DNA of 64,000 nt from Pavona decussata (taxonomy: Eukaryota), in NCBI GenBank assembly GCA_977016875.1, contig CDRNST010000056.1:62001-126000 (forward strand), in the 5' to 3' direction. The notes beneath the pieces are model-generated. The model made no database searches and was not told the DNA's origin. It worked only from the letters and a program-made list of their open reading frames with translations. This document shows positions 3,542-50,890 of the stretch, in pieces (position 1 is the first letter of the stretch; each line of letters begins with the position of its first letter). Made by a program: the position numbers and the translations under genes.

Positions 3542-6500
3542 TATATGAAAATTGTTGCGAAGAGTGCACTTTTTTAGTTACGTTGGGCTGAGATTTGGGT
3601 TCCAGTTAAGCCTAATAGGACTTTTTGTGGGGTCTAACTAATTTGCTACATTTGCACCCTCTCGTCACTAGCATGTGAAGTATGCCACTGTCGGTTCTAC
3701 CGTCGGAATTGTATCTCTAGGGTTTTAAAAAATGCCACCTGAAAGTAACTTTCATCAGTTGCACTTAAGGATGTTATCCAGAGACGTAACTCACGGCACG
3801 CATATGCCAAAACACGTTTATCATTAATGTCCAAGGAATGCGCCAACAAAGCAATATTACTCTTTCGTCCTTCTTGTCAACAACATCTGTCAAATGGTTC
3901 CTTTTTAAAGAATTAAGTACTTACAAACTGCACACGAGGATTTAAGAAGGGAAACAGACTGCCTTCAGGAAATCCGGAATTTTTCGCCTCACCCAACATG
4001 CCTGCCAAGAATCCTTTACTTGAAAGTAGGAAATAGCTACTTTGGGATGATGAGATTTACAGCGCTGATGGAGTCTGGTGTACATGAAAGAGATTCAAGT
4101 TGGAAGTAATCCAAAATTGTGGCCAAAGGAGACTAATGAAGTCAGAGAAGTTGAAAACAAATATTGGTGCGCATGCTCAGCTCTGAGTTCATGTAGTTTT
4201 CAATGCGAGCAGGTCGAGACATGTTTGCAGCACGTCACAGTGTATCGGAGTGTTACTAAGTTTGTGAGTTAAGACTTTTTTGGAAGCAAATTTCGAACGA
4301 ATATATTTCACAGTGGATTGATGCCAATGATACTGCTTTCAATATAGTGGTTACGGCAGATCGTCATGAACTGAGCCATGCTTTCATCGGGGACATTCTC
4401 TTAGCAGCCACCCTTACAAAGCATACAATTGTAGAAAATTCGTACAAAACAGTGAAATTGATGGCACCTGGAACGAGAGGCTGTATGTGAACGACATTAT
4501 TTACGAAGTTTATTTGGCACTTTGTATCAGAAGAAGACTGATGAGCCTTATTAAATTTCATTATCAGATTTGAGATATAATTTGTGTTAGGAAAGGTGCA
4601 GTCGCATTTTTAAATTTTAATACGTTTGCTTCAAAAGCCAGACAAAGTTGAAAGCTCGCGGGCGATCCCCATTTTAAAGTAAACCGATAGCAGCAAATGC
4701 GAAATCACAGGTATTGGATTCGACCCTGAGTTACTATTTTCGATACGGATACAATAGTAAAAGATATCATTGTAGGTGATGAAAGGCAGCAGTTATCGAA
4801 TTTTCTATTTTTAACCGACAGCTAAACTTATTGAGCTAAACTTACTAAGCTTCCTTTTGAAGTTGATGATAGTCATAGTCTTTCCACAAGTTTGACAGGA
4901 AAAAGACTGCAAAATCCATGTAATATAGTCCCTTTTACAACTAAAGGCGAAGCCAGCAAATTTTGGACCTGTCACAAAACTCGGATCTGAGGAGAGATTC
5001 TGAGTAAACTTTGAAATGAAAGAACTCGTTGATGGACTGTTTTAGTTGTCGGAGCGAAGAGCGACACAATGACTGATCTGTTTGTTATAAATCGCTATCT
5101 TAAATTTTTAAGCCAAATTCAGACAGCATGAGAGCAACGGAGGGCCTGTAACTGTGAATCCGGCCACAGAAAATTGCCGGATTCGGCGTTTTGAAATATC
5201 ATTCCTATCAGTTCCTCTTTCAGGTATTTGATCAACCTACCTTAAAAAAATCCAGTACTTCTGAATGCCATGGATAGGTGAAATTCTATGTACAAAATAG
5301 TGAAGTAAGCTTTCAGGAGCATTGTATTGGGAGTCAAGCTTCTATATATGGTCCTCAAATTAGTTGTTAATGGGCAAAGGGATTATATGAGTCGGTCTTA
5401 ATTTTATAGGCGAGGTATTTTTTTTAAGCCTCTCAGGATTAAATCAAATCTCACTTATTGAGACTCGAGCCCAGCATGTTTGTTCTTGGTCATAACTAAA
5501 GTCAAATGGAGGGGAAGCAGTATTTGCATATCAAGTCTGGCATCACCATGAATTTATCTGTCGTTATTTCCTTTTTTTTTTAAATTTCTCATCCCGGATC
5601 GTATGCTTTCTATTTCTTCCCCACCAAGGCAACAAAAAATCCGAAAAAGGAAAAAGATTCTCCAAGCCGTATATTGTCAAATACTTGATACTATTATAAG
5701 CAGTTTAAATTTTATCTCATCAAATAATGGATACAGTTTGTCTAAAATTTGAGCACTGTCTGAAGATAAAACTGCTGATCTAAAAATCGTATGGGAAGAC
5801 AGGAAATGAAACTCGTTACATCAACTGTGATAAATCTTCAGGCGGAAAGAGAAAAGGGACTTTATGCGAACGACTTAAAAGATGCTTTCCAAAGAAAGGT
5901 ATAAAGTATATAAATCGTCAAAAATGAGCCATTAGCCTGGAAATGAAGGGATCAATAGGTGGAATTTGTCTTTTATTCATTTTATGAAATTAAAACTGTT
6001 TGATGTTTAGTATTTGGAGACATACAGCTTGAGGAATCATTTCCCTCTTACCGAGTTCGTTCACCGTATCAGACAGCTGAAAAAGTATTAAGAGACTTCC
6101 TGTGACCATAATGGCAACCCTCATCGTTAAACTAATAATCTCCTCAAAGGAACTGGAATTAAGCAAATTAAGATAGGAACATCACACACGAAAAATAGGT
6201 CGAAAAACATTGCTTTATTTTCGTTTTTTCCCATGGTACTTTAATAGAGTAATATTATCTGGTTGAAATTTCATTGTAAATCTCGGTAAGATTTAATCCT
6301 CACTTTAAACGACTAGAGCTCAGGATTAAAGAAAAGGAACCGCAAAATCTAGAAACGTTTTCTAAAATACCGTCACTTAAAATAGGCCTTTCAAAAATGA
6401 TGACACTTGGGGAACTTGTCTACCTTGGACTCATGAATACTGAAAGAGTAATTCACGTTTGCCCAAAATTCTTGAAATTCTCCTCCATGCAGACTGCCAA

Positions 6501-7150
6501 GAGGACCCAGTGTCTCACAAGATCATCGCTGCTAGCGGCTCCCGGCACAGTTGATTGATTGAACCCGGGTCGGCATTACCGTACCTAAAGATTATCCTTT
6601 TAAATATTGTTTCTCAAGAGTCAAAAGTTAGGTCATGTTCACTTGAGTGGCGCTCAGTTTTCAACCTATGAATAAACACCGACCGGTGTGACTGTTCAAA
6701 TGAAAGTAGAGAATTGAGAAGTGTTTTCTAGTAACGCGGTTCCGTTTTTCAATTAGACGTGGATACTGTAGTCAACCTCCATAATTTTATTCCAGTGTTC
6801 TTAGACGCATGATGATGGCACGTGTATTACCTTATCGAAGCCATACCGACAAACGTTTCGCATAACTTGCATGCACAGACTGTCAACTATGCCCCACAAC
6901 TGCACACTTCTGCCTTATATTCTCCCCTGAGAGCTCTGCGTTCTCTCCGAGTATTTTATAGTACTGGTTGTCTACCTCTAATTAGATAAAACTCTCTTGT
7001 TTGCTCGGTATAATCAAAAGAGTTAAGAAACCAAGCAAACCAGCTTGGAGGGCCGCTCATATCGCAATGAAGCTTACTATGCTGTAAAGGTTGATTACTT
7101 ATGAAACACCTCTTTCCCCTGGATTTAGTTCATAACGGCACAATCCAAGC

Positions 7151-7250
7151 ACAAGGATCTTTTTTTTTCCTTTTCTTGTGCTTGTGCTTACGTCGCGTTC
7201 GTTTTCACCTAAACTTATGCTTATACTTGTGCTTGCGGCTAGTGGAGGTT
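7151..7250. mobile_element. Fragment of a (GCACAA/TTGTGC)-repeat MITE
   Basis: aagcacaagg...cttgtgcttgtgcttacgtc...cttatgcttatacttgtgcttgcggctagtgga; absent from the paralogous units. Confidence 0.45.
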
Positions 7251-7545
7251 TATTAATAAATAATTCTTGATTTAACTCGAATACAGTATACTCCACATAG
7301 TTAAAAGTGAGCTGAATCACGGACCAACCACTGACTCATTTTTCTCTAACTCAGGTGTTGAAAAACTAGAGCAAAGCTGGGACTAACTGAGGAATACATT
7401 GTAGCGGGTATTTGACATATCCCTAACCCAAGTATGTTAGTTATACTAACACCGTACTGAGCTGTCAAGATGAGCCTTGAGTCCAAGCGAAATGAAAGTA
7501 TAACGGATCACCACAGAGCGTAGAAGGAGAAAGTCCAAACTCCAT

Positions 7546-8150
7546 TATTCCTCGCGAAGCGAGGGCCGAAGGCCCGAGCGTAGCGAGGTTATTAAATTTG
7601 TCGGGCCGAGCCGGCCCGAGCGGAGCTAAGCCGCGCGAATTCGAGCGAAAAATATATTTATATATATATATATATGTTTATATCTTTGAAGGTGTCCGCA
7701 CAATGACGTCAGACTGTCTGGCGTTGTCTGGAGCAAAATTTGCATACACCGAAAAACATATGCGTGCATGATCAAATTTCAACTGCAATGTTCATCAATA
7801 TTCACTGGATACAGAACTATCTCTCCAGAATCTTTTCCCTTTCTTTTAGAAATCTTTTTTTGTGAAATAGTGCATTAAAGAAATTACACGCTTTGTGGCC
7901 GCAGTAAATAATTTTCCGTGGGAAATAAATTCATCGAACACGACAGCGCTGCACGCCCGTTGTACATTACGTCGCGACAGAAATAGATTTTCAACCGCAA
8001 ACTAGCCCGTGGAACTACGAAGACACTATGCTCATAACTGAAAAAATCTTATGCGCCTTTTAATCTCCTCGTTTGATGCTACAATACGTGTAAAGAGGGC
8101 TTTCCACCCAGCCCCAGCTTCGCGAGGTTTTGCGAGTCACGTACTTCTAG
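7546..8150 (+). mobile_element. Non-autonomous Helentron/HINE (DINE-1-like) element
   Basis: Subterminal inverted repeats cctcgcgaagc (7550-7560) / gcttcgcgagg (8117-8127), GC-rich 5' palindromes, internal (TA)n, 3' end CTAG. Inserted at T^T with no TSD relative to the paralogous empty sites (tccgttatatc 15465, tctattatatc 44078). Confidence 0.7.
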
Positions 8151-9469
8151 TATATCATGTGTATAGGTCAGATGGTCAAGTGAGTAGCTGGTTTTTTATG
8201 TACTTCGAACCGCATCGAGCACTAAATGACACAAACTAAAATAACAAGAAGCAAGATTCAGCGAAATTGTACCTTACAATAGAATGAAAAAGTGCAACAT
8301 TCACTATATCGCTGTGTTTATTCCGTGCGGTGTGCTATGCGTTCTCGAAGCGAAAAAAAATCCCTGGCCCTAAGTCGCTAATCAAAATATTTAGTTTTAC
8401 TGATGTCAACTAAAATCCCTTTTTCCAGGGTTATAGCACTAGTCTGAAAGTCTCCACTAAATCCGTTTAAATGACTAATTTCCTATAAATTTTTAAGAAA
8501 AGATAAATAAGTTGTACCGGCTCAAAGTCGTCGAAGAATTATGCCATATTTCTTTTACACCAAAAAAGGAAAAAAATCCAATAACAATTAAAATTACAGG
8601 TTTCATACAATAAACGTTTTGAAGTGTCAGGGATGGATCTTGCGGTTGAAGCCGGATGAAAATATAAGTGGAGATTGAGAGGGATATGCTTTCATTTGAT
8701 GTAGGGCTGTGGGAGAGTCAGTCTGTATTATTTTTTGTCGGGATGCTGGTTAAAAACAGCAGACTATGCACACGGACTTTCGATAATCACTTTCACGAGT
8801 ACCAGGCTAAAGTTTGGTCGGGATGAAGATTTTGGCTCCATCTTTTGATGGAGGGATATGGTAAAACCCAACTGACTTAAATGAACACTGAATTGGAAAG
8901 TAAACTGAACAATTAGCGCTATATAGGGAGGGACATATCCCATATATCCCATGTCCCCTTATTTCTAAAAATCCGTAATGCTTGTTATCCCGGATTCCCT
9001 ATTACATCACTGAATCGGAGGCTGACCTGAGAAACTCGTGGTGGTGCCTGAACTGCCACACATGCGCTGTTCCTCATCTTTTTCAGTTTGACCCGGAGAG
9101 GCTATGAAATTTAAGTCTCTTAGTTGCATGTACAGTTCAGGATTTTCAACCTCAAAGACAAGACAAATGTTTCTACCGTATAAAATTATGGCGTATATGT
9201 CCATTTAGAACTAATTTGTGGATGGCATATAAAACCATTCGAGGTCCCATTATTCCTGAAATCTTATTTCAAATATCATTTGTATTTAGAATCTCACCTG
9301 TCCATGGCGCTCAGAATTATAGGAACTTTCAAAAGACAATTTTAAAATGCAAGAATCTTACAAGTGAGTCTATGGCTGGATTCCCGACGTTTGGTGCTAT
9401 TCCGCATTTATCTTTCTTATTATCGCAATTGATTATCAACATTATTAATTAAGCTTCAAAATTCATTAA

Positions 9470-9798
9470 TAATTCATAAGCCCATTGAGCTGTCAAATGG
9501 TCGATAATACATCAGGTACAGTGACTTTATATCGATAAACCTCCTCCTTATAAGTATGCGGTGTTCAGCTAATAAAACACTCTTCATTAGTATGCGGTGT
9601 TTATCTCGTATGCTAGTTTCCAAGGTTCCCAAAAGCATAATTGTTATGAACTCTATTGACACACGCTTTTCCAGGAATGTTTTTGAAGCCGTTCAAAAAA
9701 CTCGCAGCACGTGTTTTTTCGGGTCTAAAACCACTCGGCTGCGCCTCGTGGTTTTAAACCCGATAAAACACTCCTGCTCTTTTTTTAAACATTACTTA
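9470..9798 (+). mobile_element. Interspersed repeat ending in a long hairpin (family uncertain, possibly non-autonomous Crypton-like)
   Basis: gtgttttttcgggtctaaaaccac-tcggctgcgcctc-gtggttttaaacccgataaaacac stem-loop at 9711-9771. Left boundary approximate. Confidence 0.5.
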
Positions 9799-10293
9799 AG
9801 GCTGGTTTCCGCATATGATCGCAGATTGCAGATCGCAATAAGGTCTGCGATCGTCTGCGATCATATGGAAACTACTTCTGCGATCGTCTGCGATCCTGCG
9901 ATCGTGATCGCAGACGATCGCAGAAGATAGAACCATGTTCTATCTAAAGGCTGGTTTCCAGATGATCGCGGATCGCAGATCGCAAACAATCGCAATTGAT
10001 CGCAGACGATCGCAGGAGATAGAACATGGTTCTATCTTCTGCGATCGTCTGCGATCACGATCGCAGGATCGCAGACAATCGCAGTAGTTTCCATATGATC
10101 GCAGACGATCGCAGACCTTATTGCGATTGGCGATCTGCGATCCGCGATCATATGGAAACCAGCCTTTAGATAGAACATGGTTCTATCTTCTGCGATCGTC
10201 TGCGATCACGATCGCAGGATCGCAGACGATCGCAGACCTTATTGCGATCTGCGATCTGCGATCGGCGATCCGCGATCATATGGAAACCAGCCT
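9799..10293. mobile_element. Palindromic PIF/Harbinger-type MITE with nested inner copy (9948-10165)
   Basis: TIR aggctggtttcc / ggaaaccagcct with TTA TSD confirmed by the empty site attacttaaacc at ~32213-32224; internal tgcgatc repeats. Confidence 0.92.
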
Positions 10294-10749
10294 TTAAACC
10301 TTGCTTAGACAGTCTCTAATTTGCCGATAGCGATTAATAACAGAAAGAGCTGCAGCGAATTCCGTTCAAACAAATTGAAGACAAATTACGTTTTCTGAAA
10401 CCCTTATCTGTGCTTAGTAAAAGGTCTAAAATTTGCCAGCTTAAAATTGTCCCACTGCAGGAGTTTAATCGTTTTTTGTCATTGTGAAAGATGCGGTAGA
10501 AATTTGACTATCGACACCAAACTGAACAGGCTTTATTCAGCAAATTTCTTAACTACAATATTTCTTAACTACGATATAATCAAATGAATCCGCAAGGATG
10601 AACAAACCATCTTACAGAACAACTTCTGCAATTAAGACACAACCGGAGCATTCTTCTTTTGTATCCCGCCTTGAAGTTCGTTAATGGGGATATGTCTTTT
10701 TATTGGCTTAAAATATGAAAAAAATCTTAAGTTTGTTTGGTGATACTTA

Positions 10750-13720
10750 GCGCTCAAATCCTTTATTGATCTGGGAAACGTAATCCTCACTTTTCTAAAA
10801 TTTTGATGACTACATCTGAAGATTAAAGAAAAAGACCCGCAAATCTAGAAACGTCTTCTAAAATCATGTAAGTCACACTTGAGAAATTTGCCAACCTCGA
10901 ACTCACACAGAACACTGATTTGAGGCGAGAGCCATTCGACAGACATTTTTTTTTTATTGAGCTCGATTTAGGCTTTTGTTCATTCTCTACCATGAGCACT
11001 TTCAGGGAACATCATTGTGCCAAAAACGGAAGAAAAAATCTTGGTTCCAAAGATTCAAACTGTCCTAGAGAAATTTGTCAGAAAGGCGCCCTGAGATCGA
11101 CATCATCTAACAATTTATCGTTACATTGCTTTCCTCCCCGAAAAGTTAAAATTTAAAAGTGATGTTTCCTGAAGAGGTTCTTTTGGATCTGTGTGACTAT
11201 TTCAATAAAAGCTATTAATGACTGAGAAATGTTTTCTTGTTGCACGGTTCCGTTTTTCAATAGTACTTAAGTGCGGGATGCTCGGCCGACGACCGGCCCG
11301 AGCCGGGATAATTTTATTTATTTATTCTGGTATTCTTAGAGGCACAGACTAAGTTAAGGCGATTTAAAAATCAGTTTCTAGTTGATCCACTTGAATGCGC
11401 GATCCACATGACCCGTGCATGACAATTTTAAAGTCATGCCGGCATACGTTTGGAATAACTTGCATGCGTAGACTGTAAACTATTTGCCGGCACTTATATC
11501 CCTTATATCAGTGGATCCCTGAGTGTGTGGATATTCTCCAGAGTATCGTTGTCTTCGATCTTCTTATTGGGCGACGCTATATTGGAGCATTCTCCTTTTT
11601 ACTGGAGGTAACTCTTTGAATTTGTGGGTGTTTGATCCCTCGAGGGGAGTGGAGTGGTGGGAGCTATAACGCGCTAAGCCTGAAATATACTAAATTATAT
11701 GGGTTTTTTCCGATGCAGTGTTCTTCTGCTGGATAAAACAGCAACTAGATATACAGCATACTGTTTTTGACTCTCTTAAAGGTCATAATCTTTATCAGCC
11801 ACGGCTGATGAGGGTGATGTCTTGCAGTTGGCAGTTCAAGCCACTGTAAGTACTGTTTGATATTCTCTTCTATTACAGCCTCATATCATATTAGAGACCA
11901 AGGGAAGTTTGCAAACCGCTTTGAGGCCGCTCGTAAGGTAGCAAAGATTACAGAGGGAGAGGTTGGATACAATAATAATAAGTGTATTATCGTTTGTCTC
12001 ACGATGACTCTAAGATTTAAATCGCGACGTTCCGACTGCTTACTGCTAGTCTGCATCAGGCCATGAGGTCGACTGGTTACGCGGCACCATTTATGTCACA
12101 ATGGTCGGCTGTGATTGGTACATTTCGATCCCCATTGTTTGGGCGAGAAGTTGTTCCCTCCCTTTAGTTTCTCTTAGTCTTCATTGGACTGACGAAATCT
12201 CGTGTTCTCTGCAAAAAGGATTTTAACTAAACAACATTATTACTGAGTCTGGGTTCGGTGACTTTACGTAGGAAGGAACGGATGGAACTTTCAAAGCGTC
12301 CTTATAAGGATCGTTCTCCTTCTTTATGTAAGTGCCCTGCATTTAGATACAAATTGAAAACCCGATAAAATAAATTGTGTGATAAATTGCGAAGCTGACG
12401 GCATTGATTGCAAAACAAGATTAAACACTGTAACTCAGGGTTATGGGAGGGGTTGGGTGGGTGGCAAAATTCAGGAACAGTATCATCAGTATGGTACAGT
12501 ATCATCAAACTGATATTCCAAGATAAATACCCGAAAAAAAAAGTCAGAACTGTAAGTTTAGTGTCGCTTGCTCACAAATTACAAAGATTATAAACGTTAA
12601 AAGTCAGCGTTGGCAGAATCCACCCCTCTCCCCCAGATAGGGTTAGCCTCTCTTTTAAAACGACTGACAAAAAAACTCTCTCGTCGGGTTTTAAACTCCT
12701 ACTTATTATACATGCTGAACTCTCCGTGAGTGCTCACTAGTAAATTATGAGCTGTAAACCGTGACAAGGTGATCCCCTGTACAAAGTCCAAAATCCATAA
12801 TATCGGTGAGCTCACTTCGTCATTATGTGATCAGTAAGCATTCTAGAAAATTCCTGAACTTGATGCCGCTTCAGAAAATTGGGTTTCCATACCCTCCTAG
12901 AAATTGACCACTAAAATCCTTATTAATTCGCTTAGGATACAACATTTTCTTTAAATATCCTCAGCATCCCGTTAAGCGTTACAATTAAGTGAGTTTAATG
13001 AAGCAAAAATTATTACACCATTCATATTTCTTTGAATATCTTGAAAATATCCGGGAAATGCTTATCTACAAGATATCGGAAAGAAGCTTTGTATAACGAG
13101 GAAAAAGTCTGTGACTTATCTTGAGCTACGACGTTAAATGATCTAACATAAAACTGATTGCAGCCTGGTTTCAGAAGTGAAAAAATAAAGTTCTTGAGAT
13201 CGTCTGGAACAAGAAGTTGTTAATGTACCTTCTTCTCTAACAAAACTGGTCAAACCAAACATAGGAAATATTAAATTCCCTGTTAAAGAATCTGCACGTT
13301 TTAAAAGAACCACTGAAGAGGTTTTACTTCAATGACCAGAGTGTGCATTCATGAATATCTGCTGACGGAAAACTTGAGATCACGTTACAAGAGAACTAAT
13401 TTGGATGTGGGGAGAGAAATGGTTTAAAATGCAGAGAGTGAGAGTATATAACAATTAATTAACGGCTCGACAAAAGGCTGTTAAAATTCTCAACTTTCAA
13501 TTTGTTAATTTTGTAGTCAAACAAGGGACCAAATGCAGATATTCGCTAAAACACTGTCTACACAGAAATCAGTTATGTGATCTTACAAGACGGCAAACTG
13601 AGTCCTAGACAAATAATCTTGTTAGAGTAATGCAATAACTAATCGCCCAAGGTTTTACAGGTGATGGAAAATTCGGCTTTGGCAAAAAGTAAAATATTTA
13701 TGTACCTGATTGCCACAATT
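10750..13720 (+). repeat. Ancient non-coding tandem unit, copy 2 (duplicated at ~32670-35580)
   Basis: Same ordered blocks at 10781, 11245, 11437, 12782, 13000 and 13614. Confidence 0.8.
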
Positions 13721-13739
13721 GCTGTTTAAGACAACTGAA

Positions 13740-13995
13740 ATTTCACACTCCTGATTTCTCAAATAGTATAGATCCACTTTCAACTTTCCTTGAGTTCAAG
13801 CAAGAATAATGTGTTTCTATAATTGCCACTGCGGACATCTGAGAGCGAGCTAGGAAAAACCCTATATTTCATTTCCCACGTTTAGCTGCATTGAAGACTC
13901 TCGAACTCTATGAGCTAGTATTAAGTCTTTTTTCCCTTTCTGTAATTGTAAAAATTGTATTCTTGAATATTTAATAATCCGAATAAAAAAATTAA
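13740..13995 (+). mobile_element. Probable 3' end of a truncated LINE (also ~35590-35850)
   Basis: Short Cys-containing terminal frame (YNCHCGHLRAS*), T-rich UTR, then AATAAA and an A-rich tail; interrupts the unit 2/3 junction. Confidence 0.35.
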
Positions 13996-13999
13996 AAGG

Positions 14000-18700: not shown

Positions 18701-19392
18701 TGGCATATTGTTTCTACACTTATAGCTTTGCGGCAGATCTTATCCAAAGACTTGTTGAGGCATATAGTTACTGAATAAAAGGATGGTTATGAGCCAGACA
18801 AACGTCTTTGTTATATATTTTTGTTAGCATTTTTGGCCTTGACCGCGCACAGACCATAATAGATTTTGAAATGTGTAAAGCAACTGACCAATAGAAACGT
18901 TCCTGTTAAGATATTCAAATGTAGGGCGGTGGATATTAAAACAAAGGATAGTGTACGGTCGAGGCCCTTCCAACACTAAATTTGCAGCACCATTGTTGCC
19001 ATGGCAAGGTTAACGATAACCAGCACCTCGATTAACTCTTGGGGCTATTTCCAGAGATTGGTTTGTCCCACGAATTCACTGAAACAGGTTCGAAGTGAAG
19101 GAAAAATTTATCCCTTAGAAATTTCGGTCAGTGTCACTTTGCGGGAAATTTTCGTGGGACACGTCTAGTCCTAGGGACTTGCGTGTTGACCTTTTATCCA
19201 CGGAACCCTAATTGGATGCATTATAAATAAACGTAAATTCCTTTCAAATGACCTCAACACAATTTTCGGTTTCCTATATAATACAGAAGCACTTGTTTTA
19301 CAAATTCTACATTTTGGGCGTGCTGTATTTGTTGTGCTATTAATTCCCCCAAAAGGAAACCTGAAGGTACTGTATCAAAAATGCCTTATTTT

Positions 19393-36725: not shown

Positions 36726-36753
36726 TTATTATTATTACAAATTATTATTATTA

Positions 36754-36791
<38 letters not shown>

Positions 36792-36812
36792 GTTATTATT
36801 ATTATTATTAAT
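36726..36812. repeat. (TTA)n microsatellite
   Basis: Imperfect tta/ttg trinucleotide run. Confidence 0.95.
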
Positions 36813-39800: not shown

Positions 39801-42774
39801 AATAAATGGGTCACTATGGGACTAGCTATGCACTTGTTTGGTATCTACTAAAACAAGTGTCCATAGATGTCAGTAAATAATTGTTAGTTGTTTACTGCTT
39901 TTACACTCAGCAAAGAATACCAAGTGTTACCTTTCAATATCTGAGTTCCTTATAATCTGATGATCTAGACTGGTTTCGCAAAATTGCATTTTCATATATT
40001 GACATTTTTCCCCACGTTTCTGTATCTACCGGGTCTGTCTTGAATTACGTCGTGATTAATTTGATCTCCTCGGGCCATCCAGGTTACTTTTTTCGTTTCT
40101 TTTAAGGCAGATGCCTTAGTAGAAAAGGTTGACTTCTCTCTAACTGTACAATACCACAAAGGAAGGGATAAGATCAGAAAAACGTCTCACTTTTCCGGAT
40201 ATAAAGTTTTATCTCAGTGTACTGTTGGGAATTTGCTGGTTAATTTTATTTCCTGGCGTCGCAAAAGTGGAGCTGCGCTTAAGTCACTGCAGACTATAAG
40301 AACTTGTCACCGATCGTAGGTAAGTAGCATTTTCAATTAACAGAACGCGAAACTCATTACTGACACGCATGCAGGCGTCTCGTCTACCTTCATTTATCAC
40401 TACGTCCTCTTTTTCCTGGCCTCTAGATAAATGCCAGTTTTTCATTCAGCTTAGAGCAAAACTTACTTCTGATTACTTAGGATGAAGTTACTTTTCCTGT
40501 TTAGGTGGTTTAACACAAAGGTGATCCCTCTGTTTGTTGCTGTTTTAACAGCAGGAACTATTTAAAAAAAAACTCTTATCGGTCAGGAAATCGTTCTATT
40601 TTTATTTTTTATTTTTAATCGAGAGAAACGTTTATCTCCAGGAGTTTGCATTTCCTGTCTTCTCCCGTGCACTCGCTGTAGCGTAGAACTCTCAATTGAT
40701 ACACTATTTGCATTGTTTTGCTGTTCATGCTGTGGCCAGGCATATTGTTTCTACACTTATAGCTTTGCGGCAGATCTTATCCAAAGACTTGTTGAGGCAT
40801 ATAGTTATTGAATAAAAGGATGGTTATGAGCCAGACAAACGTCTTTGTTATATGTTTTTGTTAGCATTTTTGGCCTTGACCGCGCACAGACCATAAGAGA
40901 TTTTGAAATGTGTTAAAGCAACTGACCAATAGAAACGTTCCTGTCAAGATATTCAAATGTAGGGCGGTGGATATTAAAACAAAAGACAGTGCACGGTCGC
41001 GGCCCTTCCAACACTAAATTTGCAGCACCATTGTTGCCATGGCAAGGTTAACGATAACCAGTTCCTCGATTTACTGTTGGGGCTATTTCCAGAGATTGGT
41101 TTGTCCCACGAATTCACTGAAACAGGTTCGAAGCGAAGGAAAAATTATCCCTTAGAAATTTAAGTCAGTGTCACTTTGCGGGAAATTTTCGTGGGACACT
41201 TCTTGTCCTAGGGATTTGCGTGTTGACCTTTTATCCACGGAACCCTAATTGGATGCATTATAATTAACGTAAATTCCTTTCAAATGACTTCAACACAATT
41301 TTCGGTTTCCTAAAATATTCCCTAGTGTCGGCTTTGACTCACAGCCTACACTCTGGAAGAATTTGAATCCGCCGGGTCTAGAATTTGTCGGCTTCTGTTC
41401 GATCTATCACAGCCATTTTGTCGTTCTTGTGTCTCTGCTATGACTCGGAGTCAACGCAAAAAGTGGATTCCCAAAGGAGGAGCAAGCCACCTTAGCGACT
41501 TCTACAGGTACAACTGGACCATAGTTTTTTTACTTTTTCCATAAAAGGCGACATGGAGTCTTTCGGCTTAAAAAAGAAAACAAATCTTAAATCAAAATTG
41601 TTGTCATTAAATTGAATTCAACACATCAATACTTTAATAGTGCTTAACGATCCTTTGTATCGGCCGCTATCGGGATGAAATTTCATTGTTTAATAATCTC
41701 AGCAAGATAATCCTCACAAAAGAAAGACCCGCAAAATCTAGAAACTTCTTCTCAAATTATCGCTGACTTTAAATGCTGATCACTCTTGAGGAATTTGTTT
41801 GCCTTCATTTCACAAAGAACAGTTGAGACAAATTCATTTAATTTGCTTGAATATTTGGTTGCTGTACTTGATGTAGACCGCAGTTCATGGTTTTCCATGA
41901 CTGGGAATTGAAAATACGACTATGATCATCGAAGCTTGATCGTTGTGGCGAGAATAAAGGCCAACATCAAGGCTGAACGCACTTGAAACTGCTTTAAAGA
42001 CAGGCTAAACTAACAGTTGGGGTGTGTCCTCTCAAGAGGTGCTTAGGTTTGAATCTATGGTTTAAACCTACCAGAGTGCAGACTATTTCAATATGAGCTG
42101 TTAATAATCGAGAAGTGTTTTCCGGTGGTACAGTTCCGTTTTTCAACTGCTACCAAGTGGATACTCTAGTAGAGCTATGTGATGCTATTTTCCTATGGTG
42201 CGGTTCCCGTTTTTCAATTGCTACCGAGTGGATACTGCAGTAGAGCTATGCATGATGCTATCCTGGTAGTCCGTTTGGAGGTACTCACAGAGTTAAGGCG
42301 ATCATAAAACGGTTTTAGTAGTTGATCCACTTGAAACCACAATCAAAGCGGTACATGCATTACATTATAAAAGCCATACCGGCAAACGTTTTGCATAACT
42401 TGCATGCATAGACTGCCGTAACTACAGACTCAGTCTATCTTATTTCAGTGGCCATTTTGCAGAGCTCTTTGTTCTCCGGGGCGTGTTCTCCAGTTCTGGT
42501 TGTCTTTCACTTATTGGACCACGCAACTGATAGGAGCATTCTCCTTTTGGCTTGGGCTACCCCTTAACCCACAAGCGAAAAACCCGTTTGTTGACCATAG
42601 TTTAGACCCAAAGCACCCAAATGGTCGTTAGGAAGGAACTATTCAAACCGCCTTTTGGGTCGCAAATACCGTCAGTAAAGTTCATTGTGGATTGCTTGCA
42701 TCATCCCGATAGTTTTTATTATACCTATAAACATTGCCTTCAATTATGACTGACGACACTATTCACACACATTA

Positions 42775-43086
42775 AGGCCCGTTTAAACGGTTTCAACATT
42801 TGCCCAACATTTTGTTGAACGGATGTTGGGCAAATGTTGGACGAACGGAGTGTTCAAACGGTTTTAACACCATTCAACATTTTCAAGAACAAAAGAAATG
42901 TTGAAGCGATGTTGAATGAAAGTTTAAACCAGTTTAAATTTGACTCAACACACTTTCAACAAGCTTTCAACATTTTTTTGGCTCTTTCAACAATGTTGGA
43001 CGACCTGTTCAAATGCCTCCGACATTTGGTTCAACAAAGTGTTGAATGCATGTTGAAGCAAACATTGAAACCGTTTAAACGGGCCT
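42775..43086. mobile_element. PIF/Harbinger-type (Tourist-like) MITE
   Basis: TIR aggcccgtttaaacggtttcaa / ttgaaaccgtttaaacgggcct, TTA TSD on both sides, internal caaca/tgttg repeats. Confidence 0.92.
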
Positions 43087-43550
43087 TTAGTTCCTCCAAA
43101 TCGTAACCAAACGGACGAAAACTAGGGTTCTAAGAGCATAAGAGTTTTCCTCTTCAGTGAGATTGCCGCGACAACAGGCAGGGACAATAACGCCCTTCGA
43201 AGGCTTCTCAAAAAGGACTTTATCGTGCTTTCAGCCGATTGCAAGAGCTTTAATTTGAAGGCAAATAAAAATTCAGGAAAGCCGATTACGGTAAAAAGCT
43301 CACAAAGTTTGCAAAGAAGAATTTTGAGTTTCAAAATATAATTTTGAACCGTTTTTATTGATCAGTCTCCTTCTCACTCGCCGGGTTTTAGAACCTTTTG
43401 TATAGTTGCTGGACTCCCCACCAGACTGCATGACACTGATAATTACGATATCTCAAAACATGGGATATTATAACATAATGGACCATAGAATATTACATTT
43501 TTAGTGTGTGTTCGTTGAATACTTAGTTGAGTTTTCTCCTCTTGTATTTA

Positions 43551-43787
43551 CAATGCGACGCGCCTTACCGTGGCCACCCAACAATTTTTTTTACAAGTTA
43601 GCCAATCAGGATACGCGAATTTTATTAACGGGCACATCTCCTTGAAAAGTCTAACAGGCAAGTGACGCAACAACGAATTATTGAAAACATGTCGGTTTGT
43701 ATTTTATGAACAAGGAGGGAGATATCCTGATTGGCTAACTTGTAAAAAACCGTTTGTTGGGTGGCCACGGTAAGGCGCTTCGCACTG
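43551..43787. mobile_element. Tc1/mariner-type MITE
   Basis: ~62 bp TIRs caatgcgacgcgccttaccgtggccacccaaca...agccaatcaggata and its reverse complement; TA on both flanks. Confidence 0.88.
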
Positions 43788-44659
43788 TAAAAGAAACTGA
43801 CTGGGAATCACTGACATTTGGACAATTAAATATTCACTAATTTTGGCGGGTAACGAACAAGTGAATAAAAGTTGACAAGGATAGAACAAAGTTATCTTAA
43901 TTGCCCAAATTTCGTGCACTAGTGAATACATTATATCATAGGTTTTTAATGTATTTGTAATTACGCACGCAACAAAACACATATGACAAGGAATTAACTT
44001 GTCCAGATAAGCAAGAGCTAGCGAAACTAATGTAGGACAGCACCATACGACGGAACTAGAAAGTCCAAAGTCCAAATTCTATTATATCTAGTGGTTGAGC
44101 TTTGATAATACTTTGTATAAGTGTGATGTGTGCTAAGTACTCTTAAAAAAACCTCACCCCAATGTCACTTCAAAATAGTAGGTTTACCATGCACTAAAAT
44201 CTTTTTATCGGTTCTTTGGAGAGCTCTACTTCCACCAAATCCGTTGGAACTGACTAATTCCCTTTAAATTTCAAGAGAGATAAATAAGTTGCACCGCCTC
44301 AAAGTCTCCTGAAATAATTGACATTTTATCAGACCAAAAAGGCAAAAGCTTTTGCAAGCATTTTACAGGTTTCCTGACATACTCAAGGTTTGTGTTGGGA
44401 TCTTGAAAGTGAAGCTTGATGAAAAGCGATGACGGAACTGAGCGAGATAAATGGCCTTTCTTTGGGGGTACTGCGGCCAGGAGTTAGTCAGAAACAGTAC
44501 GTAGACATCAAACAGGTGGGCTCTGGACATTCTCACTGACGTGAACTTTACCAAAGCGTGGGTCGAGACAAACATTTAGCTAGCAAGACGGAGATGGAAA
44601 AATGTGGCAAGAGTCAACTTTGGACTACGTGACTGAAAAGGAAAAACAAACAAGAGGCC

Positions 44660-44890
44660 CAATATATAGGGACTGGTACTATACCCTGTCTACTTAATTT
44701 TTGGACAGCCTAAACTTGATCCCAAGCCCCTAATTATAGATTATTGTTGTATCTCAACTCCAATTCTCGATTTCCCGGATTCCCTACTTTCACAGTATCC
44801 TGTATCTCTAATGATCCCTTCACATATCCGGTATCCCTAGAACTTTTTCCCCAGCATTCCCTGTCCCGATAAGCACTAAGATGGCCTCAA
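44660..44890. mobile_element. Old ATCCC-rich repeat remnant (related piece at ~8920-9000)
   Basis: tataggga... followed by multiple atccc/atccgg motifs, at the same position in units 1 and 4. Confidence 0.4.
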
Positions 44891-44897
44891 AAACCGT

Positions 44898-45452
44898 GTT
44901 GAGTGTCCATCGTCAAGAAGATCTTAAGTTGAACACTCATGTCGAAAATATTACAAAGAACGCCAGTAAGAGGCTATTTCATTTACGTGATTGCAGAGAG
45001 GCTGTCCTATCTATGGAGGTGGGGCTCACAATGTACTGCTCTTGTTGTAAGCATCGCTCACATGGGCGTTTTACCTGTACCTAGATAATGAGTTTGAACG
45101 TGTGCAGAAAAACCTCGTGGCTGTTATTGGCGCTCAACAGAATATGTTTGATAAGCTAAGCGTGGACTAGTATACTAGCGAACGAACCACATCCATGTAA
45201 TACGTACATACAACACTGCACACAAATAAGCTCAAATACAACATGAGAACCAAATGCACATGTATCGACTTTTCCACCATAATTCGTGGCTTAATTCCGC
45301 GGTTGCATCCATCATTTACATTTTTTGTTGCATATGTTTTTACTAATTAATTTTACTTACTTTTTTATTAATTTTTTTTACTTCTTATTTTTCCATTTGT
45401 ACAATTATTGCAAATTTTAATCTAAACGTGGTTTCATTAAAGATTTACTTAC
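44898..45452 (+). mobile_element. 5'-truncated non-LTR retrotransposon (CR1/L2-group) 3' fragment
   Basis: Translation LSVHRQEDLKLNTHVENITKNASKRLFHLRDCREA..LTMYCS matches the post-RT pattern LGVxxxxDLxWxxHVxxIxxKAxKRL. T-rich 3' UTR ends in attaaagatttacttac. Confidence 0.85.
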
Positions 45453-48319
45453 AAACACGGGAACAAACAACTCAAAAACGTTCATGCTGCAATTGACACT
45501 TTCCTTTGCACCTTGCCATAAAAGTTTATTAAGTGTACTAGGGTACCACCGTACAATATGATAACTGTGTGTTTGTAACCTGACTGGAAATGCGTAACAG
45601 GATCTTAAAACTCTGAAGATTATAGGAAAGCTGCACTTTTAGACTTTCAGACTTCACTGCGGAAATGAACCCTTAAGGTCAATCTACACTCAACGGAAGT
45701 CTGGAGGATACAACTGTTAAATGAATTCCTGAAGCAAAAATTAATATACCATTCGTGTTCCTTTGAATATCGGAAATGTCTATATCTATCTACATCGAAA
45801 ATGCATTGAACATAACGAAGAAAGTTAGCAACGCCGTTTAATGATCTGCCATCTATGTATATATATTGATCAGTATACTGCATCAATGTTCAAAGTTACA
45901 ACAGTTAACTAAGGGCTCCGGGAACAAGAAATTGTTCTTTGGTCGATGACAAGAGAGGCGCCAAAGGCATAGAAAAGTAAATCATCCCCTGATTAAAAAA
46001 CTGCACGTTTGAAAAGAACCAGTGGAGAGCTTTCATTTCAATGACAAAACACCGTATTTTTTCATCCACTGACTAAATTAAAAGTCAAGAGTGAATTTTC
46101 GATATGTGAGTGGCCGGGGTAGAAGTGCAGAAGTGTAAGTACCCAAGGCTGGCATATGTTATTCTCACAAGTTTGAATTTGTTCAAACACGCGGCGACGA
46201 AATGTAGCTATGTGCAATAACACCCTGTACAGAAATTGAATGTGTGATCTCATAAGATGGCAAACTAAATCCTAGACAAATAATCTTGTTAAAGTAATTC
46301 AGTAAGCAATCGAGCAAAGGTTACAAGGCGAAGCCTGAAATATCAGACAAAAAAGCACAGCTTGTAAAGTTCTCTGGCTGACTACCTCAGTCTTGAGACT
46401 TTACGTAACCAACGCCATGTCCTTGGGCTACCGCTCTTTAGCTTTTCCTGTCAGTTTATTTCAAGGCAGCTCTTTTCGTAGGAAATGGATAACCTCTTTC
46501 AAACTGTGCACTATTTCACAGCGAGAGAAAGGCCAGAAACGGGCTTCTCATTATTTGTTAAAAATTAAAGTTCTCCGGCATCGTAATAGTGGAACGCCAC
46601 CTGCTTTAGTTTTAAATGAGTGATTGCAACAATGAAAAGAAACTTTCGTAAAATTATATAAGATAGACCCGAATGTCATACTTATGCAGATGCCCATACG
46701 TAAATGTTCATTTTAATTTACGTTGCGTCCATTTGCAGACGTAAACGGACTTTGAGGAGACTGTAGTCTTTTTAGAGTCTAACCAGATCGCAAAAAGAGA
46801 GAGAGAGGCTGTTCGCTTTATCGGAATTTTTGAATCGCACAGCCCCGATTAGCTAATGACCTAATCAATAGTCAAACACCAGGGAGCCAAGTTCATACTC
46901 AAACTCACTGTAGCAAGTATAAGTATTGTAAACTAGCAAAATTGTAGGTAGGGAACATGATCTCAGAGCGGGCAATTGACTACTGCTGTCTCTTACGAAA
47001 ATTTCCATTTACCAATACCTCTTCTTCTGGTCTCTTGATGTTATTTTACCATTCAGCTTAAGATAGAGTTACTTTTCCTGTTTGGGTCGTTAAACAGAAT
47101 ATGAGCTGTCTTTTCGTTACTATTTTAACAGTAAGAACTAATTGAAACAGCTCAGATCGGTCAGGAAATCTCTTTTTACATTTTGGAGAAATGTTTATCT
47201 TCATGCAGTTCCTTTATATACTGAAGTTACGTTTCCTGTCGTCTCCTGTACATTCTCTGATTTCATGTACTGATTCCGTGTAGTATCTTTGAGGTCGGAA
47301 AAGTGTAGCTTATCTGCATGCGTTGTTGTGCCATTCATGTTACTGTATTTTCGATTGTTTGTGAACGTTTAGCTTAATCACAGAATATCTCAGTTATCGT
47401 CAGACTTCTTTGTTTCCCTCTGACTGCCCTTTGTGCATAGTTAGACAGAGGGAAGGATGTACATATGCGTTTTTCAGGCTGGAGGTAGATAAAAGAGTCG
47501 GGATTTCACACTGAGTTGAGCTACAGAAAAGGTGAAAAGGCGTGTCAAAATATCTCGAACAGGATCAACGGTAGGAGATGCACCATTTTCTATGAAGAAA
47601 GGGTCACCTTTTCTTTCAATAACGGTATCATCAACACCCATTCCTGGATGTAGATCAGTTTAGGCTATAGTGTTAATTATAAAGTCGTTTGAATGAAAAT
47701 ATAAACTTAGATCTAAGTGTTTTTGTGGCTCCAGTTTAATCCCTCTTCTAGCAAAATGTTTTACTGGTTCTTCAGACTTCTGGCTGTTCCTTGCATGCCC
47801 TAATTTAAGCGACTTAATCGAAAGTCTATCAACCAAGAAAACTAAAACATTCCAGAATTTCCTTTTCCAAAATCAGGAAAATATCGAACAAAGACCTTCC
47901 ATTAAAGTACTTACTGTTGTAGTGAGCAGCGCTCATCACAGTGGCCGGATCACGCTGGCTCCGAAAACTTAGCAGCATCAATTACCAAGGGAAAGCCGAG
48001 TTTACTCTGGCAGTTTGAGTTAACCGGCTTGATTACAGGGAACATTGCGTGGTCTGATGGCTCTCTTCATGTCTCTGTAAACAGACAGTTCGAGCACATC
48101 ATACTAAGTACTAATACAGACATACAGGGACTTAGCCTTTAGGCTATTACTTATCATTTGGATCCACAGCAGGATATACTGAAGAACCTGCTGTAGCTTT
48201 AAAACTGAAACAGGTTCTAAATCCTGAGGATAATGTTTGAGTTAAACTCAGGATCAGTCATACTTGAGTGATAGGTCCCCATCAGACTTAGAGAATGTTT
48301 TCGAGAAACAATTCGATTA

Positions 48320-48490: not shown

Positions 48491-48569
48491 CCATTTATAA
48501 ATTTAAGCTACTTCGATCTCGAAGTAGACTCTCGAGAGTCCCAGAATGGGATAATTTTAGTCCGTGGAA

Positions 48570-50890
48570 TTTTAAGACTGGGCCATTTAGAGTTATAACG
48601 TCGACATTGATCAGTCATTTTTAGGTGATTGTACTCCACTTGAATCCGCGAGCTACGAAGTCATGATGCCCTCACATTCTTGTATCCTCGCTGACTTTCA
48701 GTACTATCTGCAGGTTCTGGCCTATATTTTCTGCCGTGATCTATTAGCATAAGACGACATCAGTTTGCAACAGGAGTTTCATTTTCCTTTGTCACCAATT
48801 CACGACTGGGCATTGTAAGACTTAGAATGAGCAACCTCTCAAAACCTTTTCCAGAACTTCATTCCCATTTTTCAATCCAAATTGTCAACTGGTGACTTTA
48901 GAACAAGGCTTAGTTATCAGTTGGAAAAATTCCTGTTTTTCTAGTTGAGCCTCTCCATTTGAACTTGCAGCTTGAAAACAACCAAAGAGTCAAAATGCTT
49001 TTAAAAGCAGCTGAACACGATTTACAGGATCCTATATACATTATGAGCTCCCATGATACCAGAATTCAAACTGACTGGTTAGGTTACCCTATTACTGTAT
49101 AGGCTTGCTCTTGATGCTCTTGCTTAGGCTAAGGAGCTTGTTGACTTCTATCTTGCAATGAGGATAGCCTTGATTCAGAGGAGCTATTTAAAAAAGAATA
49201 ACCGACAAAGCCAAGGTGACACGATGCATGTGTATGGAGGTTTTGGTTTGAAATCGGGCATTGTTTGCCTATAGTGCCCTTCTTGATTTCCTCAGTTAAT
49301 TGTATGAAACGTCCGACTATGTTATGTCTTTATAGTCTTACCACCGTATGTTAAAAAATTTAAATACAATGTCTTTACTAGTCTTACAGTCCTAACATAT
49401 CTCCGAGGAGACCTCTCAGTATAAGCCCAGGGGTTTCTTGAGGTCTCCTCGTCACTTCTAACTTCTTCTAAATTACTATTATCATTCACTGTAGACTTAT
49501 GTAACATCCTAGTCTATTATTCACTGTAATTTTTTACGAATGTATGTCGTGGTGAATAAAATAAATAAATAAAAATAAATTGCTCTAAGCAGTGTCTACA
49601 CACATCCTCCTCGTTTCCAACAATATCGTTCGTTGTATTTACGTTAATTAAGCTTCAACTGCATGCGCCAGAAACTTGGAAATTTTCTTTTCCATCGACA
49701 CGAAGTATTTTTCTTTTACTCAATCGTTACAAAACGAAATGACCAAACATTACTCTGTCTAGCTCTCTCAAAAATTGTCGGCAACACAGGAGCAATGTTG
49801 TCTTGTTAAGTCAGTGCCTGCTTGTTAAAGGTCAGGATGACGTGTGTAATGTATAAGGGATTCTTCACCTTGTCTGGAGTAAACTTCTTATATATTTCGA
49901 CTTCAGGAATGTGATGAGCAGTTAAGGTTACCAGATTGTATTAATTAATACACTTTTCGGACTGAAAAAAGCGGAATAAGATTGAACGTAGAGAGACAGT
50001 GTATCATGCCCTCGATTGGCCTATTTTAGGACAAAGCAACCGATAACCGCGGTTTGGTGTGAAGTAACACTTAACTTACAGAGTCTCGCTATACCACATA
50101 GTCATGTCAAAACAGGCATGTGCAACATGACAGAAAATGCTTAAGCGCCTACATTTGTCAAACTTTCAGAGTGAAGTAGGGGAGTCGCAACCTAGCATAA
50201 ACTAGACGCAACTGACGAAAGTTTGGAGGATGTAAAATTTTAATGAATACCTGAAGAAAAAATTATTGACCATTCATGTGTTAAATATCGGAAATCGGTC
50301 TTGAGTGTAGTTAAGAAAATGCCCAGACAGGAACAACTTTTAATTATCAATAACAATCATTAGCGCCAAATAAGTAATTACTGCGGACAAGGGAACATGA
50401 GCCTTAAACAAGAGCCCCTTTTTATTGGCGGGGGCCAAAATTAAAATAAGATTTTTTTTTTTCAGAAAAGCAAACAGCACTAATTAAAAAGTAATGTTGA
50501 AAAGCTTTTATTCGATCGCTTACGAAATTATCACCGTCAAACTAAAAACTTAGAATAACATTACAAGAGTTAAGTTTTAGTTGTGCAATATCGGTTGTAA
50601 GTCTGCCGATGCAAAATGTTGAGGCTAATGCAAGGCTGATATAAATAATTGTTAGAATTTGTTAATTCAGTATACAAGAAAGTGATGAAATCTGCTACTG
50701 TGCTATATATAGCACGTTGTACAGAAACTTTGTGATCTCACACAGCAGACGAACACGCTGAGACTGCAAATAATCTCGTTAGAGTAATTCAGTAAGCTAA
50801 TCGCGCAAAGGTTACAGGTGAAGGAAATATCAGACGCAAACGCACAGCTTGCAAAGTTCTTTTGCAGTACTTAAGATGTTTATTTACGTC
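48570..50890 (+). repeat. Ancient non-coding tandem unit, copy 5 (partial, nearest SoxF)
   Basis: ccacttgaatcc block at ~48636, cctgaagaaaaaattattgaccattcatg at 50250, and a strongly conserved block at 50771-50888. Confidence 0.65.
49325..49579 (+). mobile_element. Probable LINE 3' end with (TAAA)n tail
   Basis: Ends tgtatgtcgtggtgaataaaataaataaataaaaataaa. Confidence 0.5.

What the first reader, a model, noticed from the sequence alone, without database searches (positions are those of the whole stretch)
6260..50890. Hidden ancient head-to-tail array of 3-5 kb non-coding units upstream of SoxF: candidate serially amplified enhancer array
Seen: below the recent duplication and the TE insertions, the same ordered series of blocks recurs in the same orientation at ~6.3, 10.8, 14.0, 41.7 and 48.6 kb, and again at 32.7 and 35.9 kb through the recent duplication. 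The last copy ends ~3.7 kb before the SoxF ATG. The units are heavily diverged and have no shared ORF or TIRs, yet keep short islands of much higher identity. Inference: repeated tandem duplication of a SoxF cis-regulatory module under selection on the cores, giving a dosage-tuned or shadow-enhancer array of about 7 copies. Alternatives are a ncRNA gene cluster or a decayed macrosatellite.
Basis: partly seen in the sequence, partly recalled or inferred. Interest (0 to 1): 0.78.

Follow-up and report, generated by a model that had tools for sequence, protein, structure and literature searches.

The report
Decayed non-coding repeats upstream of SoxF
The DNA between a receptor-kinase gene and the SoxF gene of a stony coral has been copied head-to-tail again and again; the oldest copies are real, occur nowhere else in the genome and share short better-kept cores, but nothing shows that they work as an enhancer array.

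Summary
Seven ordered blocks (a-g), all on the + strand, recur at 6.27, 10.76, 13.98 and 41.68 kb. A last fragment lies at 50.15-50.89 kb and ends 3.68 kb before the SoxF ATG. Younger duplicates sit at 32.7 and 35.8 kb. The "48.6 kb" start is only a faint trace. The units are 56-71 % identical (K2P 0.37-0.67), with no ORF, TIR, Rfam hit or RNA fold. In the 602-Mb genome they occur only at C56:33.6-112.9 kb. The host is a scleractinian coral, not Nematostella.

The locus reaches beyond the window: three 24-36 kb segments, with B 2-7 % from A and C, and A about 1 % from C. Short cores are 74-86 % alike in nearly all unit pairs against 53-71 % around them. In the recent duplicates, however, the cores diverge as fast as their flanks (5.0 % against 4.1 %).

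Best reading: serial tandem duplication of intergenic DNA, a process pervasive in corals. The cores are probably copies of ancestral cis-regulatory elements, now redundant and decaying. An actively selected, dosage-tuned enhancer array is not shown, and neither chromatin nor orthologous loci could be examined. The scan holds two similar notes on other DNA of this genome. It is a new member of a known kind.

The parts
6268..8923 (+). Ancient unit U1 (blocks a, b, c, d). It carries a young 0.6-kb dispersed element at 7544-8168 and is followed by a 10-bp minisatellite at 9795-10296. Its interior, 6390-9742, is missing from the paralogous copies A and C.
10757..13671 (+). Ancient unit U2 (blocks a, b, c, partial d, e)
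13983..18646 (+). Ancient unit U3 (blocks b, c, d, e, f, g). The assembly gap 14663-14825 lies between c and d.
32672..35527 (+). U2c, the younger duplicate of U2 (K2P 0.068 to U2)
35835..40678 (+). U3c, the younger duplicate of U3 (K2P 0.019 to U3)
41682..47259 (+). Ancient unit U4, the most complete (blocks a-g). Inserted in it are MITE/SINE copies at 42772-43089 and 43548-43792 and an old TE fragment at 45048-45452.
50152..50889 (+). Unit fragment U5 (block e only), the copy nearest SoxF. A faint trace of block bc lies at 48522-48654.
42350..42415 (+). Island I1 in block c. Its paralogues are at 6817-6882, 11410-11475 and 14160-14213. All pairs are 74-86 % identical against 57-66 % in the rest of the block. 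The 28-nt core pattern occurs 9 times in the genome, always in this locus and always on the + strand.
50767..50888 (+). Island I2 at the end of block e. Its paralogues are at 13612-13671, 16714-16832, 38742-38856 and 46279-46405. U5 is 80-86 % identical to the others here against 53-57 % in the rest of the block.
44231..44306 (+). Island I3 in block d (paralogues 8453-8529 and 15614-15689)
47057..47203 (+). Island I5 in block g (paralogue 18452-18608)
54567..55673 (+). SoxF coding sequence in a single exon. RNA contigs cover about 54460-56085 without any joint.
1..19276 (+). The part of younger segment B that lies in the window (C56:45586-81276 in full). It is paralogous to 23325-41312.
19286..43697 (+). 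Younger segment C (C56:81286-105697). It is 98-99.5 % identical to segment A, which lies upstream of the window at C56:19800-45228.
29818..31868 (.). A 2-kb element with terminal inverted repeats built of 19-23-bp sub-repeats. It is inserted in segment C only.

Best explanation
The region is a record of serial tandem duplication of intergenic DNA between an Ig-domain receptor tyrosine kinase gene (upstream, + strand) and SoxF. An ancestral stretch of about 5 kb upstream of SoxF was duplicated head-to-tail several times long ago, giving four units and a fragment. Unequal exchange or replication-based duplication is the likely mechanism. The units then decayed through substitution, TE insertion and loss of different blocks. 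Once direct repeats were present, two later rounds re-duplicated 24-36 kb segments that carry two or three units each. The short cores that stayed more alike (I1, I2 and three weaker ones) are most simply copies of ancestral cis-regulatory elements that were held under constraint for a long time. The copy nearest SoxF (U5, 3.6 kb before the transcript) is the best candidate for one still in use. The distal, recently re-duplicated copies now evolve at the neutral rate, so they are redundant or dead. Shown: the structure, the restriction to this locus, the non-coding nature, the layers and the core pattern. Inferred: the mechanism of duplication, the regulatory nature of the cores, and SoxF as their target.
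For: The blocks are collinear and all on the + strand. In the non-redundant 26 kb, 21 of 21 old HSPs are + strand, against mixed strands in control windows C38 and C93. Blocks a-e hit only C56:34-113 kb, and every candidate of the first look was scored. The I1 core has 9 matches in the genome, all in the locus. There are three age layers: K2P 0.37-0.67, then 0.019-0.068, then about 0.01. The two segment junctions differ. Adjacent units U3 and U4 are the closest pair in blocks bc, d and e, as tandem duplication of neighbours predicts. Nothing coding was found: no Pfam domain, no frame-specific tblastx signal, no Sox pseudogene. Peaks of windowed identity reach 0.85 against means of 0.62-0.65, and 0 of 2000 column shuffles reach them for blocks bc and e. 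Identity is raised in every unit pair at I1 and I2. In a related coral about 5-9 % diverged, one contig has 25 of its 26 mismatches left of 50767 and at most one in the first 58 bp of I2. Tandem duplication is pervasive and ongoing in coral genomes (PMC10236652). One of four arbitrary 50-kb control windows also holds a large diverged direct array.
Against: Between the recent duplicates the cores show no constraint: 35/697 sites differ against 187/4556 outside the blocks, Fisher p 0.27. In copy A of U4, one otherwise invariant I1 core position has already changed. The order of pairwise identities inside the islands differs from that in the flanks, as patchy gene conversion would also produce. 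No chromatin, reporter or cross-species data were available. The cores could equally serve the upstream kinase gene. Poor alignment in the low-identity stretches inflates the contrast between peaks and mean.
Confidence: 0.55

Rival explanations
1. An actively selected array of shadow enhancers. All or most units would be working SoxF enhancers, with copy number tuned for dosage or robustness.
For: The array faces the 5' end of a developmental transcription factor gene. The cores are shared by all ancient units. The array keeps expanding, in three layers. Enhancer sets that grew by serial duplication are known, for example at mouse Gata4 (PMC13345019) and as the duplicated Sox9 enhancer of the spiny rat (PMC9894122).
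Against: The cores evolve at the neutral rate in the recent copies. Units have lost different blocks. U1's interior was deleted from segments A and C. There are no functional data. Tandem arrays are common in this genome regardless of the neighbouring gene (PMC10236652).
Confidence: 0.15
2. A wholly neutral decayed tandem repeat of macrosatellite type. The islands would come from short-tract gene conversion or uneven mutation rate, not from any function.
For: There is no recent constraint in the islands. The order of identities in the islands does not match the order in the flanks. Divergence between B and C is itself patchy, 1.9 % against 6.8 %, which suggests conversion in this locus.
Against: The same 60-120 bp stretches are raised in nearly all pairs among four units, which would need repeated conversions at the same spots. 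CpG-containing core motifs are kept. In the related coral, I2 seems better kept than its left flank (weak evidence).
Confidence: 0.22
3. A cluster of non-coding RNA genes, with the cores as the mature RNAs.
For: The conserved cores are short, share one orientation and sit in a regular order.
Against: There is no Rfam family or tRNA. The consensus fold of I2 is only -2.7 kcal/mol, with its long helix unvaried. The two RNA-type runs of the same organism (X1 and X6, whose RNA label is the tool's guess) have zero depth over I2 in U5, while SoxF reaches 52-133.
Confidence: 0.03
4. Remnants of a long non-autonomous transposable element that inserted repeatedly in this region.
For: The genome is rich in MITE/SINE copies, several of them inside the units.
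Against: No copy of any block lies outside C56:33.6-112.9 kb, although the search finds hits of 68-75 % identity within the locus. There are no terminal repeats and no coding remnants, and the orientation is strictly uniform.
Confidence: 0.03
5. This concerns the youngest layer only. The 98-99.5 % identical segments A and C would be an assembly artefact, such as haplotypes placed in tandem near the contig start, and not a real duplication.
For: Identity is very high. The locus lies 19-113 kb from a contig end. Segment B contains a scaffold gap.
Against: A and C are separated by the clearly different segment B. The A/B and B/C junctions differ. C alone carries a 2-kb TE.
Confidence: 0.2

Closest known systems
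Shadow or redundant enhancer sets that grew by local duplication, such as mouse Gata4 and fly CG6325 (PMC13345019)
   Same: Several homologous non-coding modules lie in one regulatory landscape of a developmental transcription factor gene. They were made by serial local duplication and retain sequence to varying degrees.
   Different: In those cases the modules are defined by enhancer assays or chromatin marks. Here no activity is known, and the recent copies evolve neutrally.
The 17-kb duplication carrying Sox9 enhancer Enh14 in the Amami spiny rat (PMC9894122)
   Same: A tandem duplication of non-coding DNA upstream of a Sox gene, of tens of kb, with a short conserved core inside a larger unit.
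   Different: That is a single recent duplication whose effect on Sox9 was shown. Here there are many layers, a much older origin, and no functional test.
Pervasive tandem duplication in coral genomes (tandemly duplicated genes, about 30 % of genes in Porites lobata and Pocillopora; PMC10236652)
   Same: The same host group, the same head-to-tail mode, and the same picture of old and still continuing duplication (birth and death).
   Different: Those arrays are defined by genes. This one contains no gene apart from one duplicated terminal kinase exon at the edge of the younger segments.
Macrosatellites such as D4Z4 and DXZ4 (from my own knowledge, not tested here)
   Same: Kilobase-scale units lie head to tail at a single locus.
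   Different: Macrosatellite units are kept highly alike and vary in copy number. These units are only 56-71 % alike and differ in composition.

Membership tests
Tandem segmental duplication (locus-restricted low-copy repeat array) | Copies in direct orientation with the same internal order | tested here: met
   All block hits are on the + strand and collinear. 21 of 21 old HSPs are + strand.
Tandem segmental duplication (locus-restricted low-copy repeat array) | Copies confined to one locus | tested here: met
   Blocks a-e and the I1 core occur only at C56:33.6-112.9 kb in 602 Mb.
Tandem segmental duplication (locus-restricted low-copy repeat array) | The array is real in the organism and not made by the assembly | tested here: inconclusive
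   The ancient units lie within single segments and are far too diverged to be alleles. The youngest pair, A and C, could not be checked by read depth.
Duplicated (shadow) enhancer array | Sequence homology among the members | tested here: met
Duplicated (shadow) enhancer array | Purifying selection on the cores | tested here: inconclusive
   Identity is raised in the ancient comparisons, but the rate is neutral between the recent copies. The cross-species hint is weak.
Duplicated (shadow) enhancer array | Enhancer activity or open chromatin, and contact with the same target promoter | not testable with these tools
   No ATAC, ChIP, Hi-C or reporter data were within reach.
Macrosatellite | Units kept highly alike across the array | tested here: not met
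   Ancient units are 56-71 % identical within the alignable blocks.
Transposable element family | Dispersed copies, terminal repeats or coding remnants | tested here: not met
Non-coding RNA gene cluster | A known family, a conserved structure or transcripts | tested here: not met
   There is no Rfam or tRNA hit, no supported fold, and no RNA contig over I2 of U5 (where contigs show presence only).
SoxF group (Sox7/17/18) for the downstream gene | An HMG box closest to the SoxF members, with full-length relatives named Sox7/17/18 | tested here: met
   HMG_box scores 5.6e-24. The best solved structure is SOX-17. Relatives include Desmophyllum SOX-7 at 79 % and Exaiptasia Sox-7. The C-terminal EEFDQYL is seen; that this motif marks the SoxF group is from my own knowledge.

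The most novel reading that the evidence does not exclude
The cores I1 and I2 are working SoxF enhancers, and the locus is a copy-number-expanding enhancer array: three rounds of amplification, the last about 1 % old. On this reading, serial duplication of regulatory DNA, and not only of genes, would be a regular way for corals to adjust developmental regulators. Similar cryptic arrays were noted near FoxL2 and in a NOX-like gene of the same genome.
Probability: 0.12. Interest if true: 0.65.

Novelty: new member of a known kind. Interest (0 to 1): 0.3.

Why it matters
If the cores prove regulatory, this locus would be a clear natural example of an enhancer landscape built by repeated local duplication in an early-branching animal. 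Its copies of several ages would allow retention, divergence and decay of duplicated enhancers to be read side by side. As it stands, it mainly shows that the tandem duplication known for coral genes also reshapes the intergenic DNA around a key developmental gene. It also gives two precise elements of 60-120 bp (I1 and I2) to test.

Tried and rejected
2. Scans of metagenome contigs for the I2 and I1 core patterns each gave 0 hits. This is uninformative, because close coral DNA may simply be absent from that collection.
3. The idea that I2 is a 5' non-coding exon or the promoter of SoxF is rejected. RNA contigs of two runs cover 54460-56085 with no joint, and nothing covers I2.
4. The idea that the units carry decayed SoxF copies is rejected by tblastn.
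5. An RNA structure for I2 is rejected. Rfam and tRNA searches found nothing.
6. A hidden coding gene is rejected by Pfam scans of all ORFs of 80 aa or more and by tblastx.
7. I planned eight control windows.
8. A clean genome-wide search of blocks f and g failed, because a high-copy 120-bp repeat took all the scoring slots.
9. Transcription factor motifs in the cores were not tested. Any resemblance, such as the TTGCAT in I1, is recall only.
Full report
SETTING. The window is G000:C56:62001-126000 of a 602-Mb assembly in 1180 contigs. RNA runs that hold the region are labelled coral metagenome. The ORF at 54564-55673 has an HMG box (5.6e-24). Its best solved relative is SOX-17. Its full-length relatives are named SOX-7/17/18: Desmophyllum pertusum at 79 %, Porites lobata at 74 %, Exaiptasia at 39 % and Nematostella at 42 %. 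The gene is therefore a SoxF of a scleractinian coral, not of Nematostella. Contigs of two runs of the same organism cover about 54460-56085 without any joint (the tool only guesses that these two runs are RNA). The mRNA is thus single-exon and starts about 100 bp before the ATG at 54567.

THE GAP. The only N run is 14663-14825. Its two flanks align collinearly with continuous sequence in both paralogous segments. These are window 36515/36828, 312 bp apart, and C56:38079/38374, 294 bp apart. Order and orientation across the gap therefore agree with the paralogues. The gap falls between blocks c and d of unit U3.

YOUNGER LAYERS. Self-comparison of C56:1-156000 shows three large segments. They are A (C56:18695-45228, upstream of the window), B (45586-81276) and C (81286-105697).
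- A and C are 98-99.5 % identical. B differs from both by K2P 0.019-0.068.
- The two junctions differ. The end of A at 45228 meets the start of B, which matches A at 18695. The end of B, which matches A at 42840, meets the start of C, which matches A at 19800.
- C alone carries a 2-kb TIR element at window 29818-31868.
- Whether A and C are both real could not be checked by read depth.

ANCIENT LAYER. Below these layers, a word-7 self-comparison and nhmmer profiles of five block models recover an ordered series a-b-c-d-e-f-g, always on the + strand.
- U1: 6268-8923 (a, b, c, d).
- U2: 10757-13671 (a, b, c, part of d, e).
- U3: 13983-18646 (b-g).
- U4: 41682-47259 (a-g).
- U5: 50152-50889 (e only).
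- Younger copies: U2c (32672-35527) and U3c (35835-40678).
At 48.6 kb there is only a 7.7-bit trace of block bc. Before the younger duplications U4 followed U3 directly, so the ancestral array was U1-U2-U3-U4-U5-SoxF. Identities within blocks are 56-71 % (K2P 0.37-0.67). Block a is better kept, at about 76 %. U3 and U4, which are neighbours, are the closest pair in blocks bc, d and e. In the non-redundant 26 kb all 21 old HSPs are + strand. Control windows C38 and C93 show mixed strands, from scattered TEs.

LOCUS RESTRICTION. Genome-wide searches with blocks a-c, d and e returned only C56:34-113 kb, with every candidate scored. The 28-nt I1 core pattern, with up to two mismatches allowed, has nine matches in 602 Mb. 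All are on the + strand in this locus, and the reversed control has none. What does hit elsewhere are inserted repeats: 7544-8168 (98 %, many copies), 42772-43089, 43548-43792, 49279-49580, 48328-48450 and an old fragment at 45048-45452. Blocks f and g were not searched cleanly.

NON-CODING. No ORF of 80 aa or more in the window has a Pfam domain except Sox. tblastx between units gives only short hits, in several frames and on both strands. There is no Sox pseudogene, no Rfam family or tRNA, and no supported consensus fold for I2 (-2.7 kcal/mol). The two organism-A runs have no contig over I2 of U5.

ISLANDS. Windowed identity peaks at 0.85 against block means of 0.62-0.65. For blocks bc and e, 0 of 2000 column shuffles reach the peak. 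For d the figure is 81 of 2000, and for fg 11 of 2000.
- I1 (42350-42415 and its paralogues) is 74-86 % identical in all six unit pairs, against 57-66 % elsewhere in the block.
- I2 (50767-50888 and its paralogues) is 68-86 % identical, against 53-71 %. The contrast is strongest for U5, at 80-86 % against 53-57 %.
- The spacing from I4 to I2 is 534-631 bp in four units.

The test against selection comes from the recent duplicates. Between B and C the islands differ at 35 of 697 sites, against 187 of 4556 outside the blocks. Between B and A the figures are 32/684 against 186/4547, and between A and C 7/704 against 42/4594. There is no deficit in any comparison. If the islands were still evolving about three times more slowly, as the ancient comparison implies, roughly ten differences would be expected between B and C. 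In addition, copy A of U4 has already changed a core base of I1 that is otherwise invariant.

One weak hint points the other way. In a related coral, about 5-9 % diverged in this non-coding DNA, a contig over 50452-50824 has 25 of its 26 mismatches before 50767. The list of differences in that output was truncated.

SURROUNDINGS. Upstream, on the + strand, lies a receptor tyrosine kinase gene with Ig domains. Its Ig exons are at C56:4334-6051. Its kinase exons are at 16027-16332, 17497-17694 and 24358-24519. The last of these lies inside segment A and has an intact copy, 95.7 % identical, in B at C56:51708-51869. The ancient array therefore fills much of the intergenic DNA between the 3' end of this gene and the 5' end of SoxF. 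SoxF is the gene whose promoter faces the array.

HOW ORDINARY IS THIS? Tandem duplication is pervasive, old and ongoing in coral genomes. About 30 % of genes are tandem duplicates in two species (PMC10236652). One of four arbitrary 50-kb control windows (C15) holds an even larger diverged direct array, which appears to be a gene cluster. The scan's notes list two other cryptic old non-coding arrays in this genome, one upstream of FoxL2 and one in a NOX-like gene. I did not check either.

READING. The structure is best explained as serial tandem duplication of intergenic DNA in at least three rounds, followed by decay. The cores are most simply copies of ancestral cis-regulatory elements that stayed constrained for a long time. 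The proximal copy in U5 is the best candidate for a live element. The distal, re-duplicated copies are now redundant. Patchy gene conversion remains a serious alternative for the cores, because the order of identities inside the islands differs from that in the flanks, and because B-C divergence is itself patchy. An actively selected, dosage-tuned enhancer array is possible but unsupported. Duplicated enhancer sets are already known (PMC13345019, PMC9894122), so even that reading would be a new member of a known kind.

No chromatin data were available.

Noticed in passing
C56:4334-24519 (L001-L003), upstream of the window: A receptor tyrosine kinase gene with Ig domains lies on the + strand. 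It has three Ig exons and kinase exons at 16027-16332, 17497-17694 and 24358-24519. Its last kinase-domain exon lies inside younger segment A and has an intact copy, 95.7 % identical, in segment B at C56:51708-51869. This is a partial gene duplication.
   Followed up: partly
C56:18695-45228 (L002-L005), upstream of the window: A third large segment (A) is 98-99.5 % identical to window 19286-43697, so the repeated locus spans about 95 kb and starts before the window. Whether A and C are both real or an assembly artefact is open.
   Followed up: partly
window 29818-31868: A 2-kb non-coding element has terminal inverted repeats made of tandem 19-23-bp sub-repeats. It is present only in segment C. 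Its layout recalls the Sola1-type element with phased site arrays noted elsewhere in this genome (s1-489017).
   Followed up: no
window 7544-8168; 42772-43089; 43548-43792; 49279-49580; 48328-48450: Young, high-copy dispersed short elements (MITE/SINE-like, 84-98 % identical to many copies genome-wide) are inserted in or between the ancient units. The one at 48328-48450 occurs as tandem arrays with a period of about 260 bp on other contigs.
   Followed up: partly
window 10294-14662 against 32218-36515: Divergence between segments B and C is uneven. It is K2P 0.068 over U2 but 0.019-0.027 over the neighbouring head and U3. This suggests gene conversion or a mosaic history.
   Followed up: no
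window 1-545 and 22949-24261: A 203-bp tandem repeat (three to six copies, 87-94 % alike) sits at the head of the younger segments.
   Followed up: no
window 9795-10296: A minisatellite with a 10-bp unit is expanded in segment B and absent from segments A and C.
   Followed up: no
window 62089-63250: A diverged tandem repeat (65-68 % identity, offsets of about 170, 345, 505 and 690 bp) lies 6.5 kb downstream of SoxF.
   Followed up: no
window 53836-53870: A short stretch has a very high summed contig depth and many loose ends in all four runs. It is probably a small dispersed repeat just upstream of the SoxF promoter region.
   Followed up: no
window 50400-56400, runs X2 and X3: Libraries labelled metatranscriptomic cover the whole 6 kb evenly, non-coding DNA included, at 90-95 % identity. 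This looks like DNA of a related coral species carried over into the libraries, not transcription.
   Followed up: no
L011-L015 (C15:1500001-1550000), control window: A large diverged direct-repeat array of about 33 kb of + strand alignments at 74-80 % identity, with ORFs of 311 and 329 aa repeating about every 5.5 kb. It is probably a tandem gene cluster.
   Followed up: no
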